Below, in pieces: positions 17,253-53,800 of a stretch of 64,000 bases of DNA. The stretch spans positions 72,230,001 to 72,294,000 of the forward strand of contig NC_091286.1 in NCBI RefSeq assembly GCF_032444005.1, read 5' to 3'. The notes beneath the pieces were generated by a model. The model was not told the DNA's origin. It made no database searches and worked only from the letters and a program-made list of their open reading frames with translations. The position numbers and the translations under genes were made by a program. Every line of letters starts with the position of its first letter. Within the stretch, counting starts at the first letter, position 1. The DNA is from Ranitomeya imitator (taxonomy: Eukaryota).

Positions 17253-19830
17253 GACACCACAGTGCCCCAGCGACTCAGCCGTGCCAGACACCACAGTGCC
17301 CCCAGCGACTCAGCCGTGCCAGACACCACAGTGCCCCCAGCGACTCAGCCGTGCCAGACACCACAGTGCCCCCAGCGACTCAGCCGTGCCAGACAGCACA
17401 GTGCCCCCAGCGACTCAGCCGTGCCAGACACCACAGTGCCCCCAGCGACTCAGCCGTGCCAGACAGCACAGTGCCCCCAGCGACTCAGCCGTGCCAGACA
17501 CCACAGTGCCCCCAGCGACTCAGCCGTGCCAGACAGCACAGTGCCCCCAGCGACTCAGCCGTGCCAGACACCACAGTGCCCCCAGCGACTCAGCCGTGCC
17601 AGACACCACAGTGCCCCCAGCGACTCAGCCGTGCCAGACACCACAGTGCCCCCAGCGACTCAGCCGTGCCAGACACCACAGTGCCCCCAGCGACTCAGCC
17701 GTGCCAGACACCACAGTGCCCCAGCGACTCAGCCGTGCCAGACACCACAGTGCCCCCAGCGACTCAGCCGTGCCAGACACCACAGTGCCCCAGCGACTCA
17801 GCCGTGCCAGACACCACAGTGCCCCCAGCGACTCAGCCGTGCCAGACACCACAGTGCCCCAGCGACTCAGCCGTGCCAGACACCACAGTGCCCCCAGCGA
17901 CTCAGCCGTGCCAGACACCACAGTGCCCCAGCGACTCAGCCGTGCCAGACACCACAGTGCCCCCAGCGACTCAGCCGTGCCAGACACCACAGTGCCCCAG
18001 CGACTCAGCCGTGCCAGACACCACAGTGCCCCCAGCGACTCAGCCGTGCCAGACACCACAGTGCCCCCAGCGACTCAGCCGTGCCAGACACCACAGTGCC
18101 CCCAGCGACTCGGCCGTGCCAGACACCACAGTGCCCCCAGCGACTCGGCCGTGCCAGACACCACAGTGCCCCCAGCGACTCAGCCGTGCCAGACACCACA
18201 GTGCCCCCAGCGACTCAGCCGTGCCAGACACCACAGTGCCCCCAGCGACTCGGCCGTGCCAGACAGCACAGTGCCCCCAGCGACTCAGCCGTGCCAGACA
18301 CCACAGTGCCCCCAGCGACTCAGCCGTGCCAGACACCACAGTGCCCCCAGCGACTCAGCTGTGCCAGACACCACAGTGCCCCAGCGACTCAGCCGTGCCA
18401 GACACCACAGTGCCCCAGCGACTCAGCCGTGCCAGACAGCACAGTGCCCCCAGCGACTCAGCCGTGCCAGACACCACAGTGCCCCCAGGCCCCCAGCGAC
18501 TCAGCCGTGCCAGACACCACAGTGCCCCCAGTGACTCGGCCGTGCCAGACAGCACAGTGCCCCCAGCGACTCAGCCGTGCCAGACACCACAGTGCCCCCA
18601 GCGACTCAGCCGTGCCAGACACCACAGTGCCCCAGCGACTCAGCCGTGCCAGACAGCACAGTGCCCCCAGCGACTCAGCCGTGCCAGACACCACAGTGCC
18701 CCCAGGCCCCCAGCGACTTGCTGAGCCAGACACCATAGTGCCCACGGCAACACGGCCGTGCCAGACACCACAGTGCCCCCAGCAACTGAGCCGTGCCAGA
18801 CAGCACAGTGCCCCCAGCCACTCGGCCGTGCCAGACACCACAGTGCCCCCAGCGACTCAGCCGTGCCAGACAGCACAGTGCCCCCAGCGACTCAGCCGTG
18901 CCAGACAGCACAGTGCCCCCAGCGACTCGGCCGTGCCAAACACCACAGTGCCCCCAGCGACTCAGCCGTGCCAGACACCACAGTGCCCCCAGCGACTCAG
19001 CTGTGCCAGACACCACAGTGCCCCCAGCGACTGAGCCGTGCCAGACACCACAGTGCCCCCAGTGACTCAGCTGTGCCAGACAGCACAGTGCCCCCAGCGA
19101 CTCAGCCGTGCCAGACAGCACAGTCCCCCCAGCGACTCGGTCGTGTCAGACAGCACAGTGCCCCCAGCGACTCGGCCGTGCCAGACAGCACAGTGCCCCC
19201 AGCGACTCGGCCGTGCCAGACACCACAGTGCCCCCAGCGACTCGGCCGTGCCAGACACCACAGTGCCCCCAGCGACTCGACCTTGCCAAACACCACAGTG
19301 CACCTGGCGACTCGGCCGTGCCAGACACCACAGTGCCCCCAGCGACTCAGCCGTGCCAGACAGCACAGTGCTCCCCGGCAACTCGGCCGTGCCAGACACC
19401 ACAGTGCCCCCAGCGACTCAAGGGTGCCAGACAGCACAGTGCCCCCGCGACTTGTCCGAGCCAGACACCATAGTGCCCATGGCGACTCGGCCGCGCCAGA
19501 CACCATAGTGCCCACGGCGACTCGGCCGCGCCAGACACCACAGTGCCCCCAGCGACTCGGCCGTGCCAGACAGCACAGTGCCCCCAGCGACTCGGCCGTG
19601 CCAGACAGCACAGTGCCCCCAGCGACTCAGCTGTGCCAGACACAACAGTGCCCCCAGCGACTCGGCCGTGCCAGACAGCACAGTGCCCCCAGCGACTCAG
19701 CCGTGCCAGACAGCACAGTGCCCCCAGCGACTCAGCCGTGCCAGACACCACAGTGCCCCCAGCGACTCGGCCGTGCCAGACAGCACAGTGCCCCCAGCGA
19801 CTCGGCCGTGCCAGACAGCACAGTGCCCCC
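17253..19830. repeat. 35-bp GC-rich minisatellite (~74 units)
   Basis: Unit ccagacaccacagtgcccccagcgactcagccgtg; 34/35-bp variants; explains all ORFs from 17165 to 19878. Confidence 0.97.
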
Positions 19831-21734
19831 TCCCCCCACAGTATAAAGAGTAGTAGAATAGAAAAAACAGCTCAATAACTTGGGCACAGATGCCACTCTA
19901 TAATGATACACCCCTGTGATGATCCAATTCCTCAGGGTAAAAGTCCAACTTTATTAAATGCTCAGTTTAAAGAAAAAAAAACACAGAATATCCACATCTG
20001 TTCCTTACCAGCGTGTCCAGATGATACTTTACTTCGGATACATATGACCAGTTTAGGAACTTTTCAATTCATATATCAGTAGGGAAACTTACAGGGGCTG
20101 ATAGTGGGGGAACAGAAAAAAACTGCTCTGCTTTCAGGGAGCGTAGGGACATAAAAGTATGGGGGCGGTTTTACTTTCTTTTCACCATCCCAACCCCCCT
20201 GTACACAAGCATGCTCAAATTGGCCAAGTGTGCATGTACTTAAAATGGGGACAAGGGAACAAGTGGCTGAAAGAAACCTCTGACTGAGTCTTAAAGGATA
20301 AGGCACGCTGACAATCAAGATGTCCAATCCTTCTCTCTCTCTATCTGCTTTCTAGGGAGAGTGCGGACACCTCACACACAATCTGAGGCTGATATGGTCA
20401 CGTTCAGTCAATGTTCATCTAGTACATGTGGCCACCTTCAGCCTGTCCTGAAATCATACCAATATCCTACAAACATGAGTATTCTGATCTGTGAGTCTCC
20501 TGCCATGACTCCGACATCACACATAGGTAATAATGTGATGGCCATGGTCTGCTGGGGAAACATGGGACCCACTACACCCAGATCACATAGTGAATGCGGC
20601 CATATTACTGCACGTGGCGTGATGCAACCGCAGCAGACAGTTGTGGAAAATCCAAACCTGCTGGAAAAGTCAACAGAAAGCAATATGAAACGTGCGACTG
20701 CGAGTTAGTGACTTTTTTTTTTTTAGTTTGTATTGCAAATCTTAAAATCACTCATCATCGCCAAATGGCACCTTAAAAATAATCCGGCAACTTTACTGCA
20801 AGTTGTAGGCGGATCTGGAAGCCATGAAGCCCTGGACTAAAAAGAAGTCTGAGAGATCCCCTCATACATGTTGTTATTAAAATACATATACTTTTGTAGT
20901 GAGCAGTTCAATAAGTGTTGAGACCCCCTGATAAAATGCGAGGACCCTGATCACAGTGGTAATAGAGGTCCTGCGCTGGTACTTTCCATGAGATATCAGT
21001 TCAGCATAACTCAATAGCTTCTTCTGGTGTAAGGACCCTGCTATTCTATAACCAGAGCCTGAGCTCAGCAAAGGGGGCGCCGAAATATAGATAAATACTG
21101 CCATCTAGTGGTTGTGCCTCACTACAGGTCCACTATCCCATCAGCCAAAAACAGCACTGTCCTCTGTGTAGTGTTCCTCCAGTGACTGGTTTGGGGACTT
21201 CGCCATATTCAGATGATCGCACTGATCATCAAAAGCAACAAACATGAGTATCGCTGAAATGGAGCGATGCAGCACAAAACAGAAATGGGGGAGCACAGGA
21301 ATTTGTACAATCAACAGCACTCAATTTTTTCGAGCAAGTGATAGATCCTCTAAAATTTTCATCTAAAAACAACAACAAAAAAAAGACACCCTTAAAAAAA
21401 ATCAACGAGAAAAAAGTAGAGGCTCTCATTATGTAGTGACACACAAATTACATTTTTTTTTTTTTAAACATGGGTTTTTTGTGCCAAAATGTAAAATAAA
21501 ATTACATATCTGGCTTGTAACACCAATCTCATCAAGCACATTGGAATTGTGAAATGGATTTAGGCCCCTGTTTTTTCTATTAGAAAAACAAACAAACACT
21601 CTACCCCCCTAATCAATTCTCCCCTCTTTTCTTCAAGTGCTGCCCGGATCTCCATTCACTGGCTGTAATAATGTCCTATTTCTCACTTCTGTGGGCAGCA
21701 ATTGGCTGCTATAGTCACATGTCCAGAAGAGACC

Positions 21735-24700
21735 AGCAGGGACCTGTGCAGCAGCACTGGAACAGGAGCAGCAGGGACCTGAGCTGCGCTGGAACAGGAG
21801 CAGCAGGGACCTGAGCAGCGCTGGAACAGGAGCAGCCCGGACCTGAGCTGCGCTGAGAAAGGAGCAGCAGGGACCTGAGATGCGCTAAAAAATGAGCAGC
21901 ATAGACCTGAGCAGTGCTGGGAAAGGAGCAGCAGGGACCTGAGCAGCACTGGAAAAGGAGCAGCAGGGATCTGAGCAGCACTGGAACAGGAGCAGCAGGG
22001 ACCTGAGCTGCGCTGGGAAAGGAGCAGCAGGGACCTGAGATGCGCTGGAACAGGAGCAGCAGAGACCTGAGCAGCGCTGGGAAAGGAGCAGCAGGGACCT
22101 GATCAGCACTGGAAAAGGAGCAGCAGAGACCTGAGCAGTGCTGGGAAAGGAGCAGCAGGGACCTGAGCAGCACTGGAAAAGGAGCAGCAGGGATCTGAGC
22201 AGCACTGGAACAGGAGCAGCAGGGACCTGAGCTGCGCTGGGAAAGGAGCAGCAGGGACCTGAGATGCGCTGGAACAGGAGCAGCAGAGACCTGAGCAGCG
22301 CTGGGAAAGGAGCAGCAGGGTCCTGATCAGCACTGGAAAAGGAGCAGCAGGGATCTGTGCAGCGCTGGCACAGGAGCAGCAGGGACCTGAGCAGCGCTGG
22401 AAAAGGAGCGGCAGGGACCTGAGCAGCACTAGAACAGGAGCAGCAGGGACCTGAGCAGTGACAGAAAAGGAGCAGCAGGGACCTGAGCAGCGCTGGAAAA
22501 GGAGCGGCAGGGACCTGAGCAGCACTAGAACAGGAGCAGCAGGGACCTGAGCAGTGACAGAAAAGGAGCAGCAGGGACCTGAGCAGCGCTGGAAAAGGAG
22601 CAGCAGGAACCTGAGCAGCGCTGGAAAAGGAGCAGCAGGGACCTGAGCAGCGCTGGAACAGGAGCAGCAGGGACCTGAGCAGCGCTAGAAAAGGAGCAGC
22701 AGGGACCTGAGCAGTGCTGGGAAAGGAGCAGCAGGGACCTGAGCAGCACTGGGAAAGGAGCAGCAGGGACCTGAGCAGCACTGGAAAAGGAGCAGCAGAG
22801 ACCTGAGCAGCGCTGGGAAAGGAGCAGCAGGGACCTGAGCAGCGCTGGAAAAGGAGCAGAAGGGACCTGAGCAGCGCTGGGAAAGGAGCAGCAGGGACCT
22901 GAGCAGCACTGGAAAAGGAGCAGCAGGGACCTGAGCTGTGATGGAAAAGGAGCAGCAGGGACCTGAGCAGAACAAACAGGAGCAGCGGTGACCTGAGCAG
23001 CGCTGGAAAAGGAACAGCACGGACCTGAGCAACACTAGAAAAGGAGCAGCAGGGACCTGAGCAGCACTGGAACAGGAGCAGCGTTGACCTGAGAAGCTGG
23101 AAGATGAGCCGCGGGGACCTAAACAGCACTGGAAGATGAGCAGCCAGGACCTGAGCAGCGGTGAAAGATGAGCTGTGGGGACCTGAGCAGCGCTGAAAGA
23201 TGAGCCGCGGGGACTTGAGCAGCGCTGGGAAAGGAGCAGCAGGGACCTGAGCAGCGCTGGAACAGGAGCAGCAGGGACATGAGCAGAACTGGAACAGGAG
23301 CAGCGGTGACCAGAGCAGAACTGGAACAGGAGCAGCGGTGACCAGAGCAGCGCTGGAAAAGTAACAGCGTTGACCTGAGTAGCGCTGGAAAAGGAACAGC
23401 ACGGACCTGAGCAACACTAGAAGAGGAGCAGCAGGGACCTGAGCAGCATTGGAACAGGAGCAGCAGGGACCTGAGCAGCGCTAGAAAAGGAGAAGCAGGA
23501 ACCTGAGCAGTGCTGGGAAAGGAGCAGCAGAGACCTGAGCAGCGCTGGGAAAGGAGCAGCAGGGACCTGAGCAGCGCTGGGAAAGGAGCAGCAGGGACCT
23601 GAGCAGCACTAAGAAAGGAGCAGCAGGGACCTGAGCAGCGCTGGGAAAGGAGCAGCAGGGACATGAGCAGCGCTGGGAAAGGAGCAGCAGGGACCTGAGC
23701 AGCACTAAGAAAGGAGCAGCAGGGACCTGAGCAGCGCTGGGAAAGGAGCAGCAGGGACATGAGCAGCACTGGAACAGGAGCAGCGTTGACCTGAGCAGCT
23801 GGAAGATGAGCCGCGGGGACCTAAACAGCACTGGAAGATGAGCAGCCAGGACCTGAGCAGCGCTGAAAGATGAGCTGTGGGGACCTGAGCAGCGCTGAAA
23901 GATGAGCCGTGGGGACTTGAGCAGCGCTGGGAAAGGAGCAGCAGGGACATGAGCAGAACTGGAACAGGAGCAGCGGTGACCAGAGCAGAACTGGAACAGG
24001 AGCAGCGGTGACCAGAGCAGCGCTGGAAAAGTAACAGCGTTGACCTGAGTAGCGCTGGAAAAGGAACAGCACGGACCTGAGCAACACTAGAAGAGGAGCA
24101 GCAGGGACCTGAGCAGCATTGGAACAGGAGCAGCAGGGACCTGAGCAGCGCTAGAAAAGGAGAAGCAGGAACCTGAGCAGTGCTGGGAAAGGAGCAGCAG
24201 AGACCTGAGCAGCGCTGGGAAAGGAGCAGCAGGGACCTGAGCAGCGCTGGGAAAGGAGCAGCAGGGACCTGAGCAGCACTAAGAAAGGAGCAGCAGGGAC
24301 CTGAGCAGCGCTGGGAAAGGAGCAGCAGGGACATGAGCAGCGCTGGGAAAGGAGCAGCAGGGACCTGAGCAGCACTGGAACAGGAGCAGCGTTGACCTGA
24401 GCAGCTGGAAGATGAGCCGCGGGGACCTAAACAGCACTGGAAGATGAGCAGCCAGGACCTGAGCAGCGCTGAAAGATGAGCTGTGGGGACCTGAGCAGCG
24501 CTGAAAGATGAGCCGTGGGGACTTGAGCAGCGCTGGGAAAGGAGCAGCAGGGACCTGAGCAGCGCTGGAAAAGGAGCAGCAGGGACCTGAGCAGCGCTGG
24601 AAAAGCAGCAGCAGGGACCTGAGCAGAACTGGAACAGGAGCAGCGGTGACTAGAGCAGCCCTGGAAAAGTAACAGCGTTGATCTGAGCAGCGCTGGAAAA

Positions 24701-25488
24701 GGAGCAGCAGGGACCTGAGCAGCGCTGGGAAAGGAGCAGCAGGGACCTGAGCAGCGCTGGAAAAGGAGCAGCAGGGACCTGAGCTGCGCTGGGAAAGGAG
24801 CAGCAGGGACCTGAGCAGCGCTGGAAAAGTAACAGCGTTGACCTGAGTAGCGCTGGAAAAGGAACAGCACGGACCTGAGCAACACTAGAAGAGGAGCAGC
24901 AGGGACCTGAGCAGCATTGGAACAGGAGCAGCAGGGACCTGAGCAGCGCTAGAAAAGGAGAAGCAGGAACCTGAGCAGTGCTGGGAAAGGAGCAGCAGGG
25001 ACCTGAGCAGCGCTAGAAAAGGAGCAGCAGAGACCTGAGCAGCGCTGGGAAAGGAGCAGCAGGGACCTGAGCAGCGCTGGGAAAGGAGCAGCAGGGACCT
25101 GAGCAGCACTAAGAAAGGAGCAGCAGGGACCTGAGCAGCGCTGGGAAAGGAGCAGCAGGAACCTGAGCAGCGCTGGGAAAGGAGCAGCAGGGGCCTGAGC
25201 AGCGCTGGAAAAGGAGCAGCAGGTACCTGAGCAGCGCTGGAACAGGAGCAGCAGGGACCTGAGCAGCGCTGGGAAAGGAGCAGCAGGGACATGAGCAGCG
25301 CTGGGAAAGGAGCACCAGGGACCTGAGCAGCGCTGGAAAAGGAGCAGCAGGGACCTGAGCAGCGCTGGAAAAGCAGCATCAGGGACCTGAGCAGAACTCG
25401 AACAGGAGCAGCGGTGACTAGAGCAGCCCTGGAAAAGTAACAGCGTTGATCTGAGCAGCGCTGGAAAAGGAACAGCACGGACCTGAGC
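21735..25488. repeat. 32-bp purine-rich minisatellite (~115 units) with higher-order blocks
   Basis: Unit ggagcagcagggacctgagcagcgctggaaaa; diagnostic variant blocks recur at 23101, 23803 and 24409. Confidence 0.97.
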
Positions 25489-25489
25489 A

Positions 25490-25780
25490 CACTTCGTGGA
25501 AAATCCGCTGCGGAAACGCTGCGGTTTAAAAGAAGTAGCATGTCACTTCTTTTTTGTGAATCTGCAGCGTTTTTATACCCATTCCATTATAAAAAACTGC
25601 AGGGGTAAAAAACGCAGCAAATCCGCAATAAAATCCGCAATAAAACCGCAGCAAAAACGCACAAAAAATGTTGTGGAACCGCACAAAAAATGCGACAAAT
25701 CCGCAGGTGCGTTTTCTGCCAGAAGAGGCAGAATCCGCACCAGAAATTCCTAAGCCTAATCCGCAACGTGTGCACATAGC
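25490..25780. mobile_element. 5'-truncated Harbinger-like MITE (family of 48070-48432)
   Basis: Ends ccgcaacgtgtgcacatagcc; contains aatccgca/tgcgg repeats like the 48070 copy. Confidence 0.65.
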
Positions 25781-26699: not shown

Positions 26700-28298
<1,599 letters not shown>

Positions 28299-30190: not shown

Positions 30191-31757
30191 GTGCACATTG
30201 CGCAGGAACTAGCCCAGCCCCGGAAACAATGGTCACTGATGACACTTCATTCCATTTCAGGGCGGAGGCTGCAGCTGTGACCATGGCACCTGCCCCCTGA
30301 TGATACTTTTTTTCAGGGATTCTCAAACAAAGCATCATAAAAAAGTGAAAAAAATACAAATAAAAGAAGTTAGTGTAGTTACGGAAGGATAGGGAATTTT
30401 TAATTCATGAATATTAGAAAATAACTTAGATTATAGCACCAAATAGGTATTAAGGATGACTATTACTTTGTATGTCGGACCACCCCTTTAACCTCAGCCC
30501 CCTGTGCCATGCACCAGCTGCCTAATACAAATGAGCTGCAGTAAATTCAGCATGTATTACCTCGGAATGACCACCAGGTGGCAACATAACCCCCGGATTA
30601 TATAACTGACCCGCTTTACTTTCTGGCTCGTACGGGCGAGTCTCACACAGTTCACTCTCCTGATAATCATAAAGAAGACGACAAACACTCATCTATTCTA
30701 CAGCTAGTTGTTACCTCTCTCTGTCTATTATACTCGGGCGCCCATCTACAGGGATCAGACCACAAGGAGATCTGAAATCGGCGGCAAGGAAATGGACAAG
30801 GAAGGGCAACAGCTCGCTTTGAGCACTATGCATTGCCCAAATCAAATATGGCCGCTGAACTACGGCGGCTGTGGAGGGACAAAATGCAGAATGCGACCGC
30901 GAATGATAAAAGTATGATAGTGCAGTGTAAGGCAAAGTATGAGGCGTCATGTGATGTGAGCGAGAGCTTTGTATTTTTTTAAAGGTTGTTGAGCTCATTT
31001 AGATTTTTACCTCAAAAAATGGCAGCTGAATAAAAAAAAGAGGGTGTTATTATGATCCTTGGGGTCATAAATTGTGATTGTGAAAAGGGGATTATATGAT
31101 GGCACAGCCACTTAACGGGGCATACAGGGAGATAGAATTTATGGATAGATGATAACTGTAGATCGATGGCTCTGAATGTTATCCGTGTGTCTTGGGCATG
31201 CTCGATCAATATGTTTGCATCCCTGCATCTGCATTATTCGCGGCTGTCAGACAGCTTCAACACGTGGGGATTCCCTAACAGGCAATCCCGCATGTGTTGC
31301 TGCTGTCGAACAGCAGACGCAAGGACCAGAACATAATATACGATAATACGAGCACACCCAAGATACACGGATAACACCCGAGCACACTCTCTCATCACCA
31401 ATGCCCACTGATCGCCACAAAGGATCCCTTTAAATCCTGTTACCATACACTGGCAGTGCATTCAGCAGTCGGGAATGTACGCAGCCTCTCCATTCATTCT
31501 TTATAGGTGTCAGCTGGAAAAAGACAGGAATAAAAGGTGCCCTTTCTGGCGATAGTGTTTTCAAACTAGAATGCCCCTTTAAGGCCAGGGTTACACGGCA
31601 AGATGTGTCGCCCAGCAGTGAAATCACAGTGTTGGAAGCATCTAACGATTTAATATGGCGTCGCACTGTGGCAAACGTTACCAAATGTGTTGCATTTTCT
31701 GCTGCAAGTTGCAAACTTGCTGTAGACTTCAATGCAAATCACACACTGAGGTCACTT

Positions 31758-32136
31758 GGGTTTACTAGGGACCGTTCCTGTCAGACTAATCTGATCAGTT
31801 TCTATGAAGAGGTAAGTTCCGGACTGGACCAAGGGAACGCAGTGGACGTTGTGTATATGGACTTTTCAAAAGCTTTTGATACGGTGCCACACAAAAGGTT
31901 GATACATAAAATGAGAATAATGGGGATAGGGGAAAATATGTGTAAGTGGGTTGAGAGCTGGCTCAGGGATAGGAAACAAAGGGTGGTTATTAATGGAGCA
32001 CACTCGGACTGGGTCACGGTTAGCAATGGGGTACCACAGGGGTCAGTATTGGGCCCTTTTCTTTTTAGCATATTTATTAATGACCTTGTAGGGGGCATGC
32101 AGAGTACAATTTCAATATTTGCAGATGACACTAAAC
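31758..32136 (+). mobile_element. CR1 LINE reverse-transcriptase fragment (continues at 39183-39210)
   Basis: GFTRDRSCQTNL...DVVYMDFSKAFDTVPH...GVPQGSVLGP...IFADDTK; the reading frame resumes as LCRVINT after the nested insertion. Confidence 0.92.
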
Positions 32137-32339
32137 CATACCTCCCAACTTTTGAAGCGGGGAAAGAGGGACAAAGTTAGCGGCGCGCAACGCGCGCCGC
32201 GGCAAATTTTAGGTCACGCCTCTGACCACACCCATTCACTAGTCACACCCATATCCACGTCTCAACTACACCCATTTAGCACTGCTGATCACACTGTTCA
32301 TAAAGAATAATTATAAACAAAAAAATATGGCCACACAGT

Positions 32340-43328: not shown

Positions 43329-43739
43329 GGCTACTTTCACACTAGCGTCGGAATCTCCCCGTCGCAATGCTTCGGGCAGAGATTCCGACGCTAGCGTTTA
43401 ACGCACTGCACAGCAGAGGCAGCGGATGCATTTCTCCGGCGCCCCATTGTGAGGTGCGGGGAGGTGGGGGCGGAGTTCTGGCCGCGCATGCGCGGTCGGA
43501 AAAAGCGGTCCGTCAGGAGCAAAAAACGTTACATGTAGCGTTTTTTGCTCCCGACGGTCCGCCAAAGCACGACGCATCCATCGCACGACGGATGCGACGT
43601 GTGGCAATCCGTCGCAATGCGTCGTCAATACAAGTCTATGGGGAAAAAACGCATCCTGCAAGCACTTTTGCAGGATGCGTTTTTTCTGCAAAACGACGCA
43701 TTGTGACGGATTGCAGTTAACGCTAGTGTGAAAGTAGCC
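43329..43739. mobile_element. Harbinger-like MITE in MKKS intron 1
   Basis: TTA|ggctactttcacactagcgt ... acgctagtgtgaaagtagcc|TTA. Confidence 0.85.
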
Positions 43740-43769
43740 TTAGCCTGGGAGTGACATGAGTGTCCATAA

Positions 43770-43964
43770 GGGCTCATACTCACCTGCGAGAAACTCGGAT
43801 GAGTCTCGCATGTTAATACCCGGCGCTGCTGCCGCCACTCAGGAGCAGAGCGTGCAGCTTCATGTATTGCTATGCGGCCGCACGCTCCGATCTGAGTGCC
43901 AGCAGCAGCGCCGGGCATTAACATGCGAGGCTCATCCGAGTTTCTCGCAGGTGCGTATGAGCCC
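43770..43964. mobile_element. Harbinger-like MITE
   Basis: gggctcatac.cacctgcgagaaactcggatgag inverted at both ends; TWA flanks. Confidence 0.8.
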
Positions 43965-45117
43965 TTAGTTGTAGGTTGATAGCCCAAGAGAGGCATGTAC
44001 GGTAGAGCAGGGGCCCATCAGAGGGAGGTCACCTTGCCTTGGTTGATGGGCGGGCATACATGAATCGGCCAATTTGTGCACTAAGAACCTTCATTTTTCA
44101 TTCATAACCGTAAGTTTAAAAACATTTTTTTAAAAATATTTTTTTGAGTAGTAAACTCAAAATTGAATGTTTTGTTTTCTATAGATCTATCCATTTATCT
44201 GTATATAGATGTATATCTACCTATAGATCTATCAAATCTATCTGTGTGTAAACATTATTCTTCAACGGAGTATCTAAAAGAAGAGGTTGGACAATAGGTT
44301 GAACTAACATCACAATTATTTTTTTTTTTTTGTTAAATAATAGATCTTTATTTAGTCTACAAAAACGCATACAAATCCGCATGAAAAAAACACAAGAGTC
44401 CACATCAAATCCGCATGGATTTTTACCTGCATTTTCTGCCAAGAGATGCAGAAACTGCGCAGAAAATTCCACAGGCAAATCTGCAATGTGTGCACATACC
44501 CTAAATGCATTTATATATTTAAAATAACAAACGGAGCATATACCTTCCTGACGCTTTCATTGGTCTCAATGTTTTGGCTGCAGTGGTGCATCATGTTGAC
44601 AGGTCACTTTACCGCTACAGCCAATCATTGAGCTCAGCGGAAGGCACAATTAATAACAGCATGTGGATATGTGAAAAAATACCACCCATCTCACCAAGGA
44701 AAGAGAAAACGGTATTGTGTGCGGAATAGAAGCTGTACTGATAAGAGCAATGAATACGGCCACATCCTGGGTGCACGCATACCCTATGTTCAGCCTATAT
44801 AACTGTGAGGGTCAATCCCAAAAGAGAAAGTTCTGAAACTTGGATCAGGCAGCAAACAGCATTTCAGGGGTTTTGAAAGTGAATAATGAAATGAAGATTG
44901 CTGGCTGAAACTTTGTACCTGTGTACCTAACATATATCAAAAACATGTTTCATGTCAAGGATTTCCATAACCTTTTAGAGATCTAAATTTGACTTTTCTG
45001 TGGGCATTCTTGGTCTCGCTTGTACTCATACATGCGTCTTTCTCCAGGCCCTGCTGTGTTATTTCCGTTATTTTTGTAGCATTATTTTTCTTATATATAT
45101 TTTTTGTTTTTGTGTAG

Positions 45118-45338
45118 ATTGATCCAAGTGATGGGACTAAAATCAATATGGAAGAGCTACAAAGTTTTGATTGTTATGGGAACAAGTCTTGGAGTAATAC
45201 ACTGGGGCTGGATTAACATGCAGTCAAACCAAATATTTCATCCTGAGGGTCAAGGTCGACTACCATCCATTTTTCGGTTTCTTTCAAGAAAAGAAACGGA
45301 TCCCAAAGACAAATAATGGTGTGATTGTGGTCCTTTAG
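45118..45338 (+). other. MKKS: MKKS exon 2 (5' leader exon carrying uORF1)
   Basis: Polypyrimidine tract with tgtgtAG| at 45117 and donor AG|GTAGGT at 45339. Confidence 0.8.
45131..45316 (+). CDS. MKKS upstream-ORF microprotein uMKKS1-like, 61 aa, single TM helix
   Basis: MGLKSIWKSYKVLIVMGTSLGVIHWGWINMQSNQIFHPEG...; closely resembles the human MKKS-leader peptide as I recall it (MSLRNLWRDYKVLVVMVPLVGLIHLGW...); same exon-2 position. Confidence 0.85.
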   Translation: MGLKSIWKSYKVLIVMGTSLGVIHWGWINMQSNQIFHPEGQGRLPSIFRFLSRKETDPKDK

Positions 45339-46663
45339 GTAGGTGTCTATTCTATCCATCTGTATTTCCAGCTTTTACATACCATGCTCCAAAACTAAAC
45401 ATCAGGGCATTCGTTTGCACATTTGCTGTGTTTAAAATTGACAAATCTGTAATAAAGCTGCATGTGCATGGCCATATTACAGCTCATTATGGACAGACTT
45501 GGAAATGGGCACCCATAGAGTTATTTACTGTACCTGCACATACATATGAAGTTTTTTTATTCTGTCAATTAAATATGTGACATCAGCCTTATGTAAGATA
45601 CTATTCTCATATTTGAGCATTAGTACTAGGAGAGAATAGTACTAGGAGAGAATAGCTCCGAACATGCGGCAGCACATGGTGAAGCCTCCTCCATACAACT
45701 CTGCCTTTTGCATGAGGCATCAAGTCATTCTGTTAAATTGTAAAAAATGTTTATTATGATTTGTTTATTGAAATCCAATTGACAATTTATCTGGCTCCCA
45801 GATCCGCTTACGAATTGTTGCCTCACTTTCACTCACTCCTTAAATGGGCTCTCCAGGAATGTAATAAAACTATCCCCATCCCATAACTCCATCGGCAACC
45901 TCTTCTAGTCACGTGTCAGGACAGGCTGCAATCTGAAGAAACACCGCTCCCGAGACCTGTGCCTCAACTGACAGAGGAGCTTTGTTGTAAACACACGTTC
46001 CTGCGTGAGAACAGGAGAAAAAAATAAATATCTACTCAGCTCATTGTGCACAGAGGACTGAGACTGGGGAAAAAGAACTTTTGTGATCAGCTAGTTGAGG
46101 AGAAGAATTACTTCTTCTGTCAAAGCCCTTATCCAGTAGGTGAGCTTATAATAGAGCTCCTCTGTCAGCTGAGGCACAAGTCTCAAAAGCTCTTTTTCTT
46201 AATACTACAGCCTGTCCTGACATGTTACTAGAATGGGCTGCCCCCTGTTGTTGATGTACGCACTAGGATGAATGACAAATCTATGTATAATACATAAATA
46301 TTACTTTAAGCCTTTTTTTTTGGGGGGGGGGGTGCTTTGCTGTAAAGGAATACACAGCCCAGCAAAGGCACATGCCGGCAAAACGGAGACCAAAAGGACA
46401 GTTGGCTTCTTTCTAGTGGATGGGAATACTGGGAAAAACTCCTGATGTTTCCTTGACAAAGCGCACTTAACTTTAAAGGTGTAGTCAGACGGCCATATAA
46501 ATCAGATTGCAATGACTGGCCGACTCTCCCGGCCCGAGCATAACAGCTTCATAGAAATATATGCAATTGTCGCTTGGGAGAGCCACCGGTCCAGTCTGTG
46601 CACTGCGTTCCGATCTCTATACGGCCTTCCGACTGTGCCCTTACTCTGCTTTTCCTATGTAGT

Positions 46664-47231
46664 CAACACACCTCATGGAAGCAAGAAATCACAGTAAACA
46701 CAAATATAGAAAGTAGTAAATATCCATATACTGTGACTTATGTATCTTCTATAGACATAACAGCGGGATAAAGTCGCCAAACTTATATCGACCAAAGAAA
46801 AAACACACGACAAAGAAAATCCCAAAATATTTGAAATAATACATATAAATTTATTTAGAAAATCAGGTAAGATGACAAACAACTGGAATGGGAGGGAGAG
46901 TACAACCACATAACACATGTCAAAATAAGGACACCCACAGGACTCAAAAAATAATCATAGAGTTATATATAGGTAGCTCAGGACATACCTACTAGTAATA
47001 TAGTACTACACTTCATAGTAGTAGGTATGTCCTGAGCTACCTATATATAACTCTATGATTATTTTTTGAGTCCTGTGGGTGTCCTTATTTTGACATGTGT
47101 TATGTGGTTGTACTCTCCCTCCCATTCCAGTTGTTTGTCATCTTTTACCTGATTTTCTAAATAAATTTATATGTATTATTTCAAATATTTTGGGATTTTC
47201 TTTGTCGTGTGTTTTTTCTTTGGTCGATATA
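46664..47231. mobile_element. TSD-flanked inverted-duplication insertion (probable retroelement-end remnant)
   Basis: 14-bp direct repeat ttttcctatgtagt at 46650-46663 and 47232-47245; near-perfect ~211-bp arms at 46784-46994 and 47019-47231. Confidence 0.75.
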
Positions 47232-48069
47232 TTTTCCTATGTAGTGCCTATAATGTATACCTGCCTACATATTATCCTCGCCATACCAGCTGATGGCTAG
47301 AGGTTTTAGCCACTATTCTACAGGGCGCCCCATAGTACAGAAGGGGTTGTCTAGGTCTCAGCCTTGTAATTGTTATTCATTTAAGTTCACTAATTTTATA
47401 AAAGACCCCAGTAGTTGCTGGCATGCAATACTTTTCTTTCAAGGGATCTTCAAATCTATAAAATGTATGCATATCATTGACTTTTCCATCACTTTGATTG
47501 TTATGGATCCTGCGCTGACCTTGGAAATGAATCTGCCGCTGTTATAATAAAGTGCCTCAGCCCCTTTTACAGGTTTCTGTGGGGAGCAGCACCTTCCATT
47601 CTAGGGAATAGCCTGGTGTGCCGCTCTACAGAAAATGAGTGAACGTTCCATAGTGAAAGTCAGCTTTACATCTTGTATTTTTAGAATCATTGGGGTCCCA
47701 GAGATCAGATCTCCAGAATGCTTTATCCTAATGCTCATTGTACAAACTCCTTTAAAGCACCATTCCAGCGGTTTTTTTGTTTTTCAGCACTGGAGTGGCG
47801 CTTTACACGTAAGCACCTTGCCCCCATTCTTATACTTACCCTCTGGCAGCTTCAACTTTTACAGACGCTTCTCCAGTCCCTCAGCGCCGTTTTGTGAGCT
47901 CAGCTACTGGCTGGAAGTCAATGCAAGTCTGTGAGAGCCAGCACCGGTCTGTCATAGACTTGTATTGAAAACTTGCCTCCAGTTCGCTCCATGAAACCCT
48001 GGAGCATCCGTCAGGTCACTTTTCGCAGGACAGCGACGCTGGAAAAGGATGAAGACGGTAGGGGACTTA

Positions 48070-48432
48070 GGCTATGTACAGGCGTTGCGGATTTCTGTGC
48101 GGATTTTTCCGCTCAGTTTTTGAAAAATCCGCAGGTAAAAGGCACTACGTTTTACCTGCTCATTACCCGTGGATTTTCTATGGATTTACAGCATTTTTTG
48201 TGCCGATTTCACCTGCGTTTTACCACCTACGGATTCCTATAAATTATCAGGTGTTAAACGCTGCAGAATCCGCACAAAGAATTGACCTGCTGCAGAAAAT
48301 GCAACGCAGCATTTCTGCGCGGTATTTTCCGCAGCATGTGTACTGTGTTTTCCATAGGTTTACATGGTACTGTAAACCGGATGGAAAACTGCTGCGAATC
48401 TGCAGGCAAATCCACAACATGTGCACATAGCC
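48070..48432. mobile_element. Harbinger-like MITE in MKKS intron 2
   Basis: TTA|ggctatgtaca ... tgtgcacatagcc|TTA. Confidence 0.8.
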
Positions 48433-48585
48433 TTACTTGGCAAAAAAAACCTCTGCAGTAGTGCTTTAAACAAAATTTACAATAGTTTCCGTATTTCAGA
48501 ATGAAATTGAATGTAATTGCCATTTCTTTTCTTTTCCCCCAGATTTTTTAAGATCTGCTCTCCTTGACCTGGAATCCGAGGTGCC

Positions 48586-48738
48586 ATGAAGCAGAAATCA
48601 TTTTTGCGGAGGAACTGGTTCTGGGTCGCTGGGATATCCTTTCTAGGCATTCACTTTGGGACATATTTTATTCAAAGAATTGCAAAGAGTTCTGCTAGAG
48701 AAACTGTGGCCATCAGAGATGCTAAAAGCAGCGACTGA
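48586..48738 (+). CDS. MKKS upstream-ORF microprotein uMKKS2-like, 50 aa, single TM helix (below the ORF-track cutoff)
   Basis: gccATG context 43 nt after the exon-3 acceptor (AG 48541-48542). MKQKSFLRRNWFWVAGISFLGIHFGTYFIQRIAKSSARETVAIRDAKSSD* resembles human MKNTSWIRKNWLLVAGISFIGVHLGTYFLQRSAK as recalled. Confidence 0.88.
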   Translation: MKQKSFLRRNWFWVAGISFLGIHFGTYFIQRIAKSSARETVAIRDAKSSD

Positions 48739-48860
48739 CCAGACTGCCCCCTTCACGACCGTGCCGCTGGATAACTCACAAGCCCCCAATGTTCGTGCTA
48801 TCAGTGCTTGCCAGCGTACATCCGTCATGTCACACATTTCCCCCCTGTTGGTGTAAGATT

Positions 48861-48866
48861 AATAAA
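48861..48866 (+). terminator. Candidate internal poly(A) signal between uORF2 and the MKKS start
   Basis: AATAAA followed by U-rich sequence, 60 nt before the main ATG. Confidence 0.5.
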
Positions 48867-48926
48867 TTATATGATTTTTAAATCCTAAACTGATTTAATT
48901 TTCTTGAGGAATAGGAATTTTACATA

Positions 48927-49917
48927 ATGGAAAGAGTTGAACAGAAAAAGCAGTCGTCGTGTACAGCCGGGCCCCTAACCAGTGCATCGCTCAGGCAGGC
49001 AGTGAGTGTGATGCAGATGATGGTGGCATCCTGCTATGGCCCGTATGGAAGACTGAAGCAGATCCATAATGATAGTGGCGGGTACGTCACCACGACCTCA
49101 CAGTCCGCTGCCTTACTCGGTGGGATTTCGGTCACTCATCCTGCACTACAGTTACTAGTCGCCTCCATCCGTAATCATACCTTCGCCTTCAGTGATTGTG
49201 GACTCTTTGCAGCAATTCTTTGTTGCAGCTTGATTGACAGGTGCCTGAGATTACCGGTCTCTACCCACAAGGTGGTTAAGGCACACCAGAGTCTTACGGA
49301 CATGTGTTTGAGTTACCTGAAGTCGGAGGACTGTGCTTGCAAAATCAATGTGGATTTTACCCACAGCAAATTGCTGCTTGCCCTGACCCGCTCCGTGCTG
49401 TACAGCAAGCCGGCATGCATGATGACCAGAACAGAAGTAGATTATGTCAGTCTACTGATCGTTAAAGCTTTTCTCTACAAAGTACCCAACGTTTCCGCTA
49501 CCAGTCACCTCTTAGGAAGAACCGTGGTCGTGGCTGTGGAAGGCGCAAGCGTTATGGACTCTGCCTTCATCCCTGGCGTGCTCATTGAGGCGCCAGCCTG
49601 CGGTTGGAGCAGAACGATGCCTTCCTCTAGACTGCCCCCAACCAACATTAAGTTAGCCTTGTTTTCCGGATCGTTATGTGGAGAATTTAGTGAAACAGGA
49701 GACGGCACAGTGGAAGTTATGGCTGGGGTAGATCCAGAAAAAGTCATGTTGGACCAGTTGCTAGATTTAGGACGACAGTTAGTGGATGATGATGTGCAAA
49801 TACTTTTGTGTCAAAAAGTGATCCACCCGTCCCTGAAACAGTATCTGAAGGAGCACGATATCTGTGCCTTGGACAGATTAGGAGCAGCTCTGATGGAACC
49901 ATTAAGTGAAATGACAG
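48927..49917 (+). CDS. MKKS: MKKS/BBS6 chaperonin-like protein, coding part of exon 3 (aa 1-330)
   Basis: SCYGPYGRLKQ, FSDCGLFAAILCC, SKPACM, LCQKVIHPSLKQ, LMEPL..MTG match vertebrate MKKS; phase-1 donor G|GTAATA at 49918. Confidence 0.96.
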
Positions 49918-50835
49918 GTAATAACATAGTGGTGTACTATAAAATGACTTCCTACTGTAGTGCTTCCAGCTATCAAGGATTTCTGACGATGCCAGACATT
50001 ACAGTATTGGTGTCCACTAATTATTCACAAGTTTTTCAAAACAAGATATACACTTTCAAAAATAATGATTTTATTTCTTTTTTTTTTTTTTTTTGGGGGG
50101 GGGGGGGGGATTGCATTAAATTAGTTGTACAAGATTGGAAAAACCTTGTCAAAAACCAGTGCCATTCATAGCCACAGATCTATGCTTGACTTCATGGGCA
50201 AACACCCTTCAAAGCCAGGCAAGCCTGCTGATAGACTAGCTTTAAAGAACATAAGCTACTATTTAAAACTTTGTTCACACATTGCTTTTTTCCCCCTTTT
50301 AATGTTTGGCTTAAAAATAGCCACGTATTTTTAGTCGATTTTGCATTTTTGATTATGGCCATCTTTCAAGTCCAGTAGCAAAGCCTGTAGTAAAATTGCC
50401 CGCAGAAATGCCATACAAATGGGAGGAGGGAAAATTTGTCTTAAGTTTTTTTTAAACGAAACCTGTCGGGAGATCCAGATGGGCTGCCCAAGCAACCGTA
50501 AACCTATATCAGCCACTGACTTGTAAAAGCGGACGGGGAAACACTGCTAGGCTGACTAGTCCAAGATGCAGTTCCCAGTCGACTCCTTGCTATCCCGCTT
50601 CTTTTGATTGACAGGTCTTTCGCTACACGCACATACAGGGGGAGACTTGCGATTTTAGAGCAATGGATTTGGGAGAAGCCACCAGGGTACTACATCTTGG
50701 ACTAGTCATCCTAGATACATTGTTCCAGACAACTTTTAAAAATGTTTTCAGAGTAACACATACACATCTGCAATCATGTCGCCAGTGCCTGATTCTTCTG
50801 TCTGTGTTTGGCCAGAATGAGTCTGCGGTCAGGTG

Positions 50836-53800
50836 TTTTTTTTTTTTGTTTTTTTTAATCAGATAAATTTTTATTAAGGAAAACAATTATAACATATGAC
50901 ATCAAGCCATAATTCACATATAATCATATATTTTATGAACAAACTCTCCCCCCCCCCCTTTGAGACGCCCTTAATGCCTTCCTCATTTCCCGTCCAATAT
51001 TCCTTCCCCAAGCCAAATACAATTGTATAGTATGAACATCATCTATAACATTATGCAACCTCCCCACAAATCTAATTCCATTCTATCCATGGCTGCCATA
51101 GCTTTTGAAATACATCGAGTTTATTTCTCTTAGTATAGATACTTTTTTCCAATAATATTATATGGTCCGCCTGCGTAAGAAAGTCTCGTCCAGTCGGAGG
51201 CTCCTCCCTGATCCAGAACTGAGCTATCAATTTCCTTGCTATGAATAACAGTCTAGCAATCGCCAGTTTAGCCATAGATACCGCTGCTATTTCTTCCACA
51301 TAGCCTAATATACAGACCAAAGGGTCTCTGGGAATGACACACCTATATACCAATTCAATCCGATTCAATACAACTGTCCAGAAGGCGGACAATCTAGGGC
51401 AGTGCCACAGCATGTGTAACATGTCTGCCTGTTCCTGCGAACATCGTGGACACTCGGAATCAGACCTCAAACCCATCCTAAACAGTCTACCGGGAGTTCT
51501 GTAAGCTCTATGAATCACATATAATTTAGACATCCTCATAGAGATCTTAGGCACATATTCTAAAATAGATTCCCATCTATCATCATTTATCTCTCCCAAT
51601 TCAGCTTCCCATTTCACTCTAGACTTGATGGGATGTTTGACTAGAAAGGTGAATAATAAATCTCTATACACTTCTGAAATTGCCCCCTTGTCCCGCTGTT
51701 CTCCAAAATGGAAGCCAGCGTGATATCTATCTGGATCTCAATAAGTTTTCTCCAACATTGCGACCGATACGCATGCTGGATTCTTTTATAATTATATAAA
51801 TTTAAATGTGATAACTGGAATTCTGTTTGTAACTCCACGAATGACTTTAGTCCCCCTTGACCCATTAGCTGACCCATCTTTCTAATTCCTGCCTCTCTCC
51901 AGGGCCCAAATCCTTCCATTTGCTTAAATTCTTGTAAATTTATATTATCCCATATAGGAGAGTATTTGGTAAGGCCCGTGACACCCCTAATCTTTTTCCC
52001 ATACCTTATGAATTAGGAGAACAGTAGGAAACAGAGAGCCCAGTTTTAAAAATTGCCCCACCTCCAAACTCTCACCCAGAGGCCATTTTCCAATCAAATA
52101 TCTCAAACTACTTGGCGATTGCCCCTTTCCCATCTCCCCCCATCCTCCAATATGCTGCCCCCCCCCCCCCGCCTATATTAGTTCGCCAAACAGCGATTTA
52201 ATTTTACGAAACCTACTCTGTGGAATCCAAATTGGAGAATTATGCAGTACATATAACAGCTGTGGCATCACAATCATCTTCCTTAAATTGATTGCTGTAG
52301 ATTTGTTGGGCATAAATCCAGATTGATCTGGGTGGATTACGTTATCAATCCCATGGGTTAGTCTGTTGGCCAAGGCCTTTGCCAAATCTTTATATCCGCC
52401 ATAAGGAGTGAGATTGGTCTGTAGGACTCCGGATTCAACAGATCCTTATCAGCTTTAGGAATGACCACAACAATGGCCACTCTCATAGATGTAGGTAATA
52501 TTCCCCTCTCCGACGACTCATTAAATACTTTCTCCAATTTAGTTATTATTTCTTCACTAAAGGTTTTATACACCTCTGCCGGAATGCCGTCCGCTCCCGG
52601 GGCCTTATTATCCGCCAGTGCCACCCTCAGTTCCTCCGCTGCCATTGACCTATCCATCCATTCTCTATCTTCATCACCTAGTCTAGGAGGCTTAATCACA
52701 CTCATATACCTGTCCATCTCCTCTTGACCTTTATGTGTCTTAGAGGAGTATAGCTCACTGTAAAATTGTTTAAATACATCCAAAATTTGATCCCCTTGTG
52801 TAACCACATTACCTTCCTTTGTTTTAATTGCGTACACATGCGAGGATTCCCGTTGTCCCGAAGCTACGACTGAGAGCAGGTGCCCCACTTTCTCACCTTC
52901 CGCATAGAATGCCTCGTTCTGAAATGCCCGCAGTCTCTCTGCCTTACGGATGTGAAGTTTATTAACCTCCGACTGGGCCACTCTCATGCGGGTCTGCCTA
53001 GCTTTTGAACACTGCGCACCCAATGCCTCCGCTGCCCTTAATTCCTCCATCACTGCTTTGTCTAGATTTTGAGACCTAGTTATATATCGAGATACTTCTC
53101 TGAATAAAATCCCTCTCAAAAACGCTTTCATAGTATCCCAAACTATATGACCCTCTGCACTACTTCGTTTATCCTAAAGAATTCACCCAGTTCCTCTCCT
53201 ATCTTTCCCATATCCAACAACCGTAGCCAAAAGAAGTTAATTTTCCATCCCATACCTGCCAACCTCCCCTGTTCTCCCAATAGTAGAGATACCATCAGAG
53301 GACAATGATCCGATAGGACTCTGGGCAAATATTCCACTTCCTTCACCAAGTTATCCATCCCTTCATTTCCCAAAGCCACATCAATGGGAGACAAGGAACC
53401 ATACGTCGCCGAGTAGCACGGGTAAGTGTAGTTCTCCATATTTCGAACTCTCCACAAGTCTATCCATCCAATTTCCCTCATGTAGTTTCCAAAAGGTGTC
53501 ACATTTCCTTCCTCTCTGTTCCCTGTATGTTTGCCCTTATCCCAATGATCATTTGCAATATTATTCACGTCGCCTATTACAAGCAACGGGACCCCAGTCC
53601 ATTTCCCCGATATGTCCAGAATTTCCTGTATCTTTTTTCCAGAAAACGGTGGAGGGATATATAAAGACACAATACATAATAATCTATTCAATATCTTACA
53701 TACAATAAACACGTATTGCCCATCCTAGTCTATTATAACCTCCACTTCTTCATATGGAGTAGAAGTGTGGATTAATACCGACACTCCCCTAGCATAGGCT

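What the first reader, a model, noticed from the sequence alone, without database searches (positions are those of the whole stretch)
45131..48738. The two MKKS-leader microproteins share one TM motif and look like ancient paralogs
Seen: uORF1 has GTSLGVIHWGWINMQ and uORF2 has GISFLGIHFGTYFIQ. They align without gaps as G-x-S-hydrophobic-x-x-I-H-aromatic-G-x-x-x-hydrophobic-Q, each preceded by a basic/Trp-containing N-terminus (SIWKSYK vs FLRRNWFW). Inference: the two microproteins arose by duplication, and the intramembrane His may be a shared functional residue (cofactor binding or hetero-dimerisation). I am not aware of this relationship being described. If true, MKKS is effectively a tricistronic locus with a two-member microprotein family in its leader.
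Basis: partly seen in the sequence, partly recalled or inferred. Interest (0 to 1): 0.75.

Follow-up and report, generated by a model that had tools for sequence, protein, structure and literature searches.

The report
Two known MKKS-leader microproteins; kinship unproven
The two small membrane proteins in the leader of this frog's MKKS gene are the already described uMKKS1 and uMKKS2, and their resemblance (a Trp, a Gly and a His at the same spacing) hints at a shared origin but is too weak to prove one.

Summary
They are frog orthologues of the published MKKS-leader microproteins uMKKS1 (PNAS-117, micro-MKKS63) and uMKKS2. Assembled RNA contigs from four runs (three studies) join exon 2 to exon 3 and carry uORF1, uORF2 and the start of the MKKS coding sequence on one spliced transcript. 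The tricistronic layout is therefore real, but it is already published.

The paralogy claim stays open:
- The frog pair alone scores no better than shuffled sequences.
- Decoys that keep membrane-helix composition, and real E. coli membrane helices, reach the same score in about 1-11% of trials.
- His is 100% and 97% conserved and the first Gly 96% and 92%. An upstream Trp and a downstream aromatic residue also match.

New here: uORF2 also occurs in lamprey and hagfish. The lamprey locus has no detectable uORF1. The lamprey uORF2 matches uORF1 numbering exactly (W7, G17, H24, Y28).

I put shared ancestry at about 45%. No published statement of the relationship was found.

The parts
45118..45338 (+). 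MKKS non-coding exon 2 (221 nt), holding all of uORF1
   Evidence: An AG acceptor ends at 45117 and a GT donor starts at 45339. Contigs in 4 runs begin at 45116/45117 and join 45336(+2) to 48541(+2) with GT..AG ends.
45131..45316 (+). uORF1: 61-aa orthologue of uMKKS1 / PNAS-117 / micro-MKKS63. The ATG lies 13 nt into the exon and the stop is TAA. The predicted helix covers residues 3-32, the hydrophobic core about 12-28, and the His24 codon is at 45200-45202.
   Evidence: It is 95% identical to a Dendrobates tinctorius protein and matches 121 vertebrate relatives at E 1e-12 to 1e-36. AlphaFold2 predicts helix 3-32. Hydropathy peaks at residues 12-28.
45339..48542 (+). Intron between the two uORF exons (3204 nt), containing highly repeated elements
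   Evidence: The joint skips 3204 nt with GT..AG ends in all four runs. Summed contig depth is in the thousands at 48128-48521 (table 2).
48543..50171 (+). Exon 3: uORF2, a 188-nt spacer, then the start of the MKKS coding sequence. The 3' end of the exon was not determined; 50171 is only the end of the open frame.
   Evidence: The same contigs run from 48541/48543 to the end of the laid stretch at 49300. The ORF 48927-50171 begins the MKKS chaperonin-like protein and is 46% identical to the ray MKKS exon.
48586..48738 (+). uORF2: 50-aa orthologue of uMKKS2. The ATG lies 43 nt into exon 3 and 65 nt after the uORF1 stop in the mRNA. The predicted helix covers residues 11-48, the hydrophobic core about 13-29, and the His23 codon is at 48652-48654.
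   Evidence: Nine frog orthologues match at E 1e-14 to 1e-22. The exhaustive profile search gave 28 representatives after dropping two long unrelated proteins; named cluster members include salmonids, a ray, a lamprey and a hagfish. AlphaFold2 gives pLDDT about 91 over residues 11-30.
48861..48866 (+). AATAAA between the uORF2 stop and the MKKS ATG: a candidate internal polyadenylation signal
   Evidence: Read directly from the sequence. Polyadenylation signals inside the human MKKS leader are reported by Akimoto 2013, as summarised in PMC11837024. Use in the frog is not shown: the contigs read through it.
48927..48929 (+). MKKS start codon (A at -3, G at +4)

Best explanation
This is the frog MKKS 5' leader with its two known peptide-coding upstream ORFs.

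Shown here:
- uORF1 fills exon 2 and uORF2 opens exon 3.
- One spliced mRNA carries both ORFs plus the MKKS start.
- Each ORF encodes a single long N-terminal helix with a short, moderately hydrophobic core flanked by basic residues.

Inferred from published human work: both products insert into mitochondrial membranes, uMKKS1 in the outer membrane with its tail in the cytosol. Their translation also lowers translation of MKKS downstream, so each ORF has two roles.

On the claimed kinship: the two peptides share architecture and a W-x9-G-x6-H-x3-aromatic pattern along one helix face. That similarity lies only in the top 1-10% of what composition-matched or real membrane helices give. My reading is that common ancestry is not demonstrated. 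The resemblance is slightly more likely (about 55%) to reflect shared signal-anchor constraints plus a chance match of a few columns than an old duplication (about 45%).
For: Identity:
- Orthologue searches.
- NCBI names 'LOC128706665 homolog' and 'LOC128706666 homolog', and 'PNAS-117'.
- The ray locus has the same order: uORF1, uORF2, MKKS.
- One transcript: a GT..AG joint 45338|48543 in single contigs of 1.9-2.4 kb, in 4 runs from 3 studies.
- Architecture.
- Published function: PMC13577902 (outer-membrane BioID, effect of knockout on respiration), PMC11837024, PMC7530721, PMC6886504.

Weakness of the kinship signal:
- Pairwise score is within shuffles.
- hhalign probability is 5.8-12%, 8.5% and 25% for the slowly evolving subset.
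- Column-permuted decoys reach the hhalign score in 1.7% (all columns), 11% (3 segments) and 5% (5 segments) of trials.
- Real E. coli membrane helices reach the median cross-family HMM score in 5% and 2.8% of 361 pieces.
- Unrelated PDB chains reach 12-14 bits against either profile.
- The cross-hit is not reciprocal in the ray locus.
Against: - Every method picks the same register, and the neighbouring registers score far worse: -12.9 against -27 to -49.
- The ungapped global profile score beats segment-preserving permutations at p 0.013-0.021.
- uORF2 relatives from tetrapods and lamprey score best against the uORF1 profile (p 0.004-0.016), while fast-evolving teleost ones score worst. That is what decaying homology would look like.
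- In a six-frame scan of the ray locus (891 segments), the best non-self hit of the uORF2 profile is uORF1 itself.
- Two adjacent ORFs of the same size, topology and reported compartment have a high prior of being duplicates.
Confidence: 0.55

Rival explanations
1. The two are ancient paralogues. One ancestral signal-anchored microprotein ORF, of the uMKKS2 type as still seen in cyclostomes, was duplicated together with its exon at the base of jawed vertebrates. The upstream copy took a new tail, became uMKKS1 and then froze. The shared Trp, Gly and His mark an inherited helix face, possibly used for pairing or for a common partner.
For: - The same register is found by all methods, with p 0.004-0.05 in several composition-aware tests.
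- His and Gly columns are above 90% conserved in both families.
- Lamprey and hagfish have uORF2. The 42-kb lamprey locus, from the end of JAG1 to beyond uORF2, has no uORF1 (best E 1.6).
- Lamprey uORF2 aligns to uORF1 with no offset (W7, G17, H24, Y28), and its start MALNTSW resembles M[GS]LK[TS][IV]W of uORF1.
- Each ORF starts 10-45 nt into its own exon.
Against: - hhalign probability never exceeds 25%.
- The local-score decoy tests give p 0.04-0.11.
- The tails show no similarity.
- Only about 6 of 26 aligned columns carry the signal.
- The exhaustive uORF2 profile search recovered uORF1 sequence only inside two fusion proteins.
- Only one lamprey locus was read, so absence there could be a loss.
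Confidence: 0.45
2. The similarity is pure coincidence with no shared constraint. The two ORFs arose separately and the His in each serves unrelated roles.
For: - The pairwise score is at chance level.
- Unrelated proteins such as ribosomal protein S5 match the uORF1 profile at 13.8 bits.
- 5-11% of decoys equal the hhalign score.
Against: - A near-invariant His at the same depth of a membrane helix in both families, with identical W-G-H spacing.
- The same compartment is reported for both in human cells.
- Register specificity.
Confidence: 0.2

Closest known systems
uMKKS1 (PNAS-117, UniProt Q9HB66; also called micro-MKKS63 and MKKS3) and uMKKS2 (V9GZ13) of the human MKKS leader
   Same: Same gene, same exons, same order and near-identical lengths (61 against 63 aa; 50 against 50 aa). 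There is an AATAAA between uORF2 and the MKKS ATG. Sequence relatives are named as homologues of the human genes.
   Different: This is a frog copy. Its translation, localisation and effect on MKKS were not measured. In the frog the uORF1 stop lies 22 nt before the donor, whereas in the snailfish Liparis it overlaps the donor.
Other peptide-coding leader ORFs with a mitochondrial product: the MIEF1 and SLC35A4 upstream ORFs
   Same: Conserved upstream ORFs that both encode a stable mitochondrial microprotein and damp translation of the main ORF (PMC7530721, PMC6886504).
   Different: Those leaders hold one conserved peptide ORF. MKKS holds two membrane-anchored ones in a row.
Families of single-pass micropeptides recognised by a shared membrane-helix motif (phospholamban, sarcolipin, myoregulin), and polycistronic paralogous small ORFs (Drosophila tarsal-less/pri). 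Both are from my own knowledge, not tested here.
   Different: In those cases kinship is backed by a shared binding partner or by near-identical repeated peptides. Here there is neither.
SMIM26 (LINC00493 microprotein)
   Same: A mitochondrial single-pass microprotein. One UniRef entry for an Amphiprion uORF1 relative (P0059) carries this name. From memory only, its juxtamembrane stretch resembles the 'AKSS' stretch of uORF2.
   Different: Not tested. No tool gave me an SMIM26 sequence and I did not type one from memory. The exhaustive uORF2 profile search listed no protein I could identify as SMIM26 at E up to 0.001; the library carries no names.

Membership tests
uMKKS1 / PNAS-117 microprotein family | Significant sequence similarity to named members across vertebrates | tested here: met
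   E 8.7e-33 to a Dendrobates protein. The profile search finds 121 relatives from chimaera (Callorhinchus) to birds, several named PNAS-117 or 'LOC128706665 homolog'.
uMKKS1 / PNAS-117 microprotein family | Encoded whole in a non-coding exon of the MKKS leader, upstream of uORF2 | tested here: met
   Exon 45118-45338 is spliced to exon 3 in RNA contigs. The ray has the same order.
uMKKS1 / PNAS-117 microprotein family | Mitochondrial outer-membrane localisation | not testable with these tools
   Published for human only (PMC13577902). Here there is only the helix prediction.
uMKKS2 microprotein family | Significant sequence similarity to named members | tested here: met
   Nine frog orthologues, one named 'LOC128706666 homolog'. 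The exhaustive search gave 28 representatives after dropping two long unrelated proteins; named cluster members include salmonids, a ray, a lamprey and a hagfish.
uMKKS2 microprotein family | 50-aa ORF in the same exon as the MKKS start codon and just upstream of it | tested here: met
   The ORF is at 48586-48738 and the MKKS ATG at 48927, within one contig-covered exon. In the ray, uORF2 lies at 10001-10153 and the called MKKS gene starts at 10416.
Proposed two-member paralogue family (uMKKS1 + uMKKS2) | Significant profile-profile match between orthologue alignments | tested here: inconclusive
   hhalign probability is 5.8-12%, 8.5% and 25%. Decoy and real-helix controls give p 0.01-0.11.
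Proposed two-member paralogue family (uMKKS1 + uMKKS2) | All motif columns conserved in both families across vertebrates | tested here: not met
   His and the first Gly are conserved in both. The Ser, second Gly and Gln columns are not shared.
Proposed two-member paralogue family (uMKKS1 + uMKKS2) | Each family finds the other in searches (reciprocity), or a bridging sequence links them | tested here: inconclusive
   The uORF2 profile's best non-self hit in the ray locus is uORF1 (7.6 bits), but the reverse is not seen. Lamprey uORF2 is somewhat intermediate (p 0.015).
Tom7 (Pfam PF08038) | Score at or above Pfam's gathering cut-off | tested here: not met
   11.9 bits against a cut-off of 27, E 0.19, for uORF1 only.
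SMIM26 | Sequence similarity to SMIM26 proteins | not tested
   There is only a source name on P0059. No reference sequence was available.

The most novel reading that the evidence does not exclude
The two MKKS-leader microproteins descend from one ancestral signal-anchored microprotein gene that sat beside JAG1 before jawed vertebrates arose. Cyclostomes keep the single copy. In lamprey it has a uMKKS2-type tail, a start resembling that of uMKKS1 and the uMKKS1 numbering, and no MKKS coding exon within 10 kb. An exon duplication at the base of jawed vertebrates then produced uMKKS1. The near-invariant membrane His, with the Trp and Gly on the same helix face, is an inherited functional surface, possibly a heterodimer interface.
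Probability: 0.4. Interest if true: 0.5.

Novelty: already known. Interest (0 to 1): 0.3.

Why it matters
uMKKS1 has recently drawn attention: it is reported as the main protein product of the MKKS locus in human brain, needed for normal respiration in microglial cells, and tied to chemoresistance. If uMKKS2 is its sister, the two could act together or back each other up, which would change how knockouts of either are read. It would also give a rare vertebrate case of a small family of microproteins kept on one transcript for over 450 million years. As it stands, the locus and its three-ORF layout are published and the family claim is a reasonable but unproven hypothesis. The useful additions here are the calibrated negative-to-borderline statistics, the reduced motif, and the cyclostome data.

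Tried and rejected
- Pfam scan of both frog peptides, two relatives and the fusion protein: nothing above cut-off. The only hits were Tom7 at 11.9 bits, and ECM10 and DUF6992 noise.
- PDB sequence search with both profiles: only chance hits, ribosomal protein S5 and a protist cytochrome oxidase subunit.
- SMIM26 as a bridging family: no tool supplied its sequence. A literature search for its N-terminal string found nothing, the scan's notes have nothing, and I did not type a remembered sequence, so this was left untested.
- Akimoto 2013 itself is not held. I relied on papers that summarise it.
- The hagfish locus is not on record, so absence of uORF1 could be checked in lamprey only.
- Lamprey MKKS: tblastn with the frog exon found nothing within 10 kb downstream even at E 50. 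I could not extend the locus.
- AlphaFold2 of each peptide gives one long helix each. This fits either explanation and does not discriminate. Dimers cannot be modelled with the tool offered.
- Reversed uORF2 profile as a decoy scored 10.9 against 15.8 observed.
Full report
**What is in the window.**
- A long open frame starting at 48927 is the first coding exon of MKKS. It is 46% identical to the MKKS exon of a ray.
- uORF1 sits 13 nt inside an exon bounded by an AG acceptor (ending at 45117) and a GT donor (starting at 45339).
- uORF2 sits 43 nt inside the next exon, which also holds the MKKS ATG 188 nt after the uORF2 stop.
- An AATAAA lies in that spacer at 48861-48866.

**Transcript evidence.** I laid assembled contigs from four public runs (three studies) on 43400-49300.
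- Each run has one contig of 1.9-2.4 kb that starts at 45116/45117.
- Each contig skips 3204 nt with GT..AG ends (45338|48543) and runs on through uORF2 and the AATAAA into the MKKS coding sequence, to the end of the laid stretch.
- So one spliced RNA holds all three ORFs. In that RNA the two uORFs are 65 nt apart.
- Contigs cannot show whether the internal polyadenylation signal is used.
- One run differs inside uORF1 at two places: a silent change and Val22 to Ile. No run differs inside uORF2. One run has three differences in the spacer after it (table 3).

**Identity.**
- Word-based searches found frog orthologues of both ORFs. uORF1 is 95% identical to a Dendrobates tinctorius protein and uORF2 is 88% identical to an Anomaloglossus protein. 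Some carry NCBI names pointing to the two human leader genes, LOC128706665 and LOC128706666.
- A profile of the frog and eel uORF1 sequences found 121 relatives from chimaera (Callorhinchus) to birds. Several are named PNAS-117, the name of human Q9HB66.
- An exhaustive profile search with the frog uORF2 alignment listed 30 representatives, of which I kept 28 after dropping two long unrelated proteins.
- Named cluster members include salmonids, the ray Narcine, the lamprey Lampetra fluviatilis and the hagfish Myxine glutinosa.
- The ray locus has the same layout as the frog: uORF1, about 3 kb of intron, uORF2, then MKKS.

**What is published.**
- The pair is uMKKS1 (63 aa) and uMKKS2 (50 aa). 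They are described as translated, located in mitochondrial membrane fractions and repressive for MKKS translation, with polyadenylation signals inside the leader (Akimoto 2013, summarised in PMC11837024).
- GENCODE chose to represent such leader coding sequences as separate genes (PMC6886504).
- The same 63-aa protein was named MKKS3 in a chemoresistance study (PMC13633250).
- The repressive effect depends partly on the encoded peptide (PMC7530721).
- None of these papers, nor the others that mention uMKKS, says the two peptides are related.

**Architecture.**
- The most hydrophobic 17-residue window is residues 12-28 in uORF1 and 13-29 in uORF2.
- AlphaFold2 with the family alignments gives one long helix in each: 3-32 in uORF1 (pLDDT about 75-84) and 11-48 in uORF2 (about 91 over residues 11-30).
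- Both therefore look like N-terminally anchored single-pass proteins with basic flanks. This fits either explanation of their resemblance.

**Testing the kinship claim.**

*Pair alone.* The best local alignment of the two frog peptides scores 24 (BLOSUM62). This is reached by 22% of shuffles and by 33% of shuffles that keep the N-terminal, membrane and C-terminal segments apart.

*Column conservation, 121 against 38 sequences.*
- His: 100% and 97%.
- First Gly: 96% and 92%.
- Ser column: S59/G40 against A57/S39.
- Second Gly: 99% against 44% (mostly in tetrapods, frogs and cyclostomes).
- Final Gln: 10% (Lys 86%) against 92%.
- Also matching: Trp7 (100%) with Trp/Phe6 (96% together), Ile/Val before the His in both, and Tyr/Phe28 with Trp/Tyr27.

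*Profile against profile.*
- My hhalign run gives probability 5.8% and 12% in the two directions, P 0.0065 and 0.0025, and score 16-18.
- The tool's own run on curated alignments gives 8.5%, P 0.0039 and score 17.4, pairing uORF1 7-32 with uORF2 6-31.
- Using only the slowly evolving uORF2 lineages (cyclostomes, ray, tetrapods) gives 25% and P 0.0008.

*Calibration.*
- Permuting the uORF2 alignment columns gives an equal or better hhalign score in 1.7% of trials (all columns), 11% (within three segments) and 5% (within five segments). The reversed profile scores 10.9.
- For the slowly evolving subset the three-segment figure is 4.4%.
Permutations reach it in 0.3%, 2.1% and 1.3% of trials.
- Single uORF2 sequences against the uORF1 profile give p 0.004 (a tetrapod-like representative), 0.015 (lamprey), 0.016 (sparrow), 0.05 (this frog), 0.06 (ray), 0.08 (hagfish) and 0.10-0.12 (teleosts).

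*Real membrane helices.*
- I cut 361 helix-centred pieces from 150 kb of E. coli K-12.
- Of these, 5% and 2.8% reach the median cross-family HMM score (2.7 and 1.0 bits). None reaches the best cross-family scores (12.5 and 8.8 bits), but those are the best of 121 and 38 related sequences.
- These are bacterial multi-pass helices, so this is an imperfect null.
- Against 177,635 PDB sequences, unrelated proteins reach 13.8 and 12.1 bits.

*Searches.*
- The exhaustive uORF2 search recovered uORF1 sequence only inside two fusion proteins.
- In a six-frame scan of the ray locus, the best non-self hit of the uORF2 profile is uORF1, in the same register (7.6 bits, E 0.17 among 891 segments). The reverse is not seen.

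**Reading of these tests.** The resemblance is real and specific to one register, and about six columns carry it. It falls in the upper 1-10% of what unrelated membrane helices give. That is a hint, not proof.

**Cyclostomes.**
- The lamprey locus (42 kb) runs from the 3' end of JAG1 to 10 kb beyond uORF2. It has a clear uORF2 (E 9e-21) but no uORF1: the best hit of the very conserved uORF1 profile is E 1.6.
- It contains no Ns.
- Lamprey uORF2 starts MALNTSW, close to the uORF1 start M[GS]LK[TS][IV]W, and it carries W7, G17, H24 and Y28, exactly the uORF1 numbering.
- This fits a duplication of a uORF2-type gene at the base of jawed vertebrates. It fits a loss in lamprey equally well.
- The hagfish locus could not be fetched.

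**Verdict.** The locus is already known. The paralogy hypothesis remains open at roughly 45%.

**Limits.**
- All three word-based protein searches and the single exhaustive search were used, so I could not look for a bridging family such as SMIM26. One UniRef entry attaches that name to a uORF1 relative. My recollection of a similarity between SMIM26 and uORF2 is from memory and untested.

Noticed in passing
L001 (Lampetra fluviatilis OZ243569.1), uORF2 in the open stretch 32172-32333: The lamprey uORF2 homologue lies downstream of JAG1 on the same strand. It is followed about 100 nt later by AATAAA. No MKKS coding exon is detectable within 10 kb downstream, only reverse-transcriptase-like ORFs, and there is no uORF1 anywhere in the 42 kb. 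It may be a stand-alone microprotein gene there.
   Followed up: partly
L006 (Liparis tanakae SRLO01008000.1), 2411-3274: In this snailfish the uORF1 stop (TGA) overlaps the splice donor (AA|GTGA). The annotated spliced model therefore reads in frame from uORF1 into uORF2 and gives a 125-aa two-helix fusion (P0151). Unspliced or early-polyadenylated RNA would give uORF1 alone.
   Followed up: partly
P0155 (Lucifuga dentata KAF7645440.1): A second annotated fusion: the first 22 or so residues of uORF1 are joined through unrelated residues to a complete uORF2. I could not tell whether it is an alternative splice form or an annotation artefact.
   Followed up: no
P0059 (UniRef A0AAQ5XHA0_AMPOC): A clear uORF1 (uMKKS1) relative from Amphiprion is named 'Small integral membrane protein 26' by its source. 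This is either a naming error or a hint of a link to SMIM26.
   Followed up: no
window 48789-48881: A further 30-codon ATG ORF lies between the uORF2 stop and the MKKS ATG and spans the AATAAA. Its conservation was not examined.
   Followed up: no
window 17165-25541: About 8 kb of GC-rich (up to 66%) tandem repeats give long repetitive open frames on both strands, with Pro/Ser/Thr/Gln-rich units of roughly 35 aa. It looks like a large minisatellite array.
   Followed up: no
window 26975-27792; 31605-32180; 51072-53712 (minus strand): Transposon remnants: Tc1/mariner-like transposase pieces, a reverse-transcriptase fragment, and LINE-like endonuclease and reverse-transcriptase ORFs downstream of the first MKKS coding exon.
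   Followed up: no
window 43400-43800, 44385-44581 and 48128-48521: Summed contig depth is in the hundreds to thousands, with many variant contigs, in all four runs. These are highly repeated, transcribed elements upstream of exon 2 and at the 3' end of the intron.
   Followed up: no
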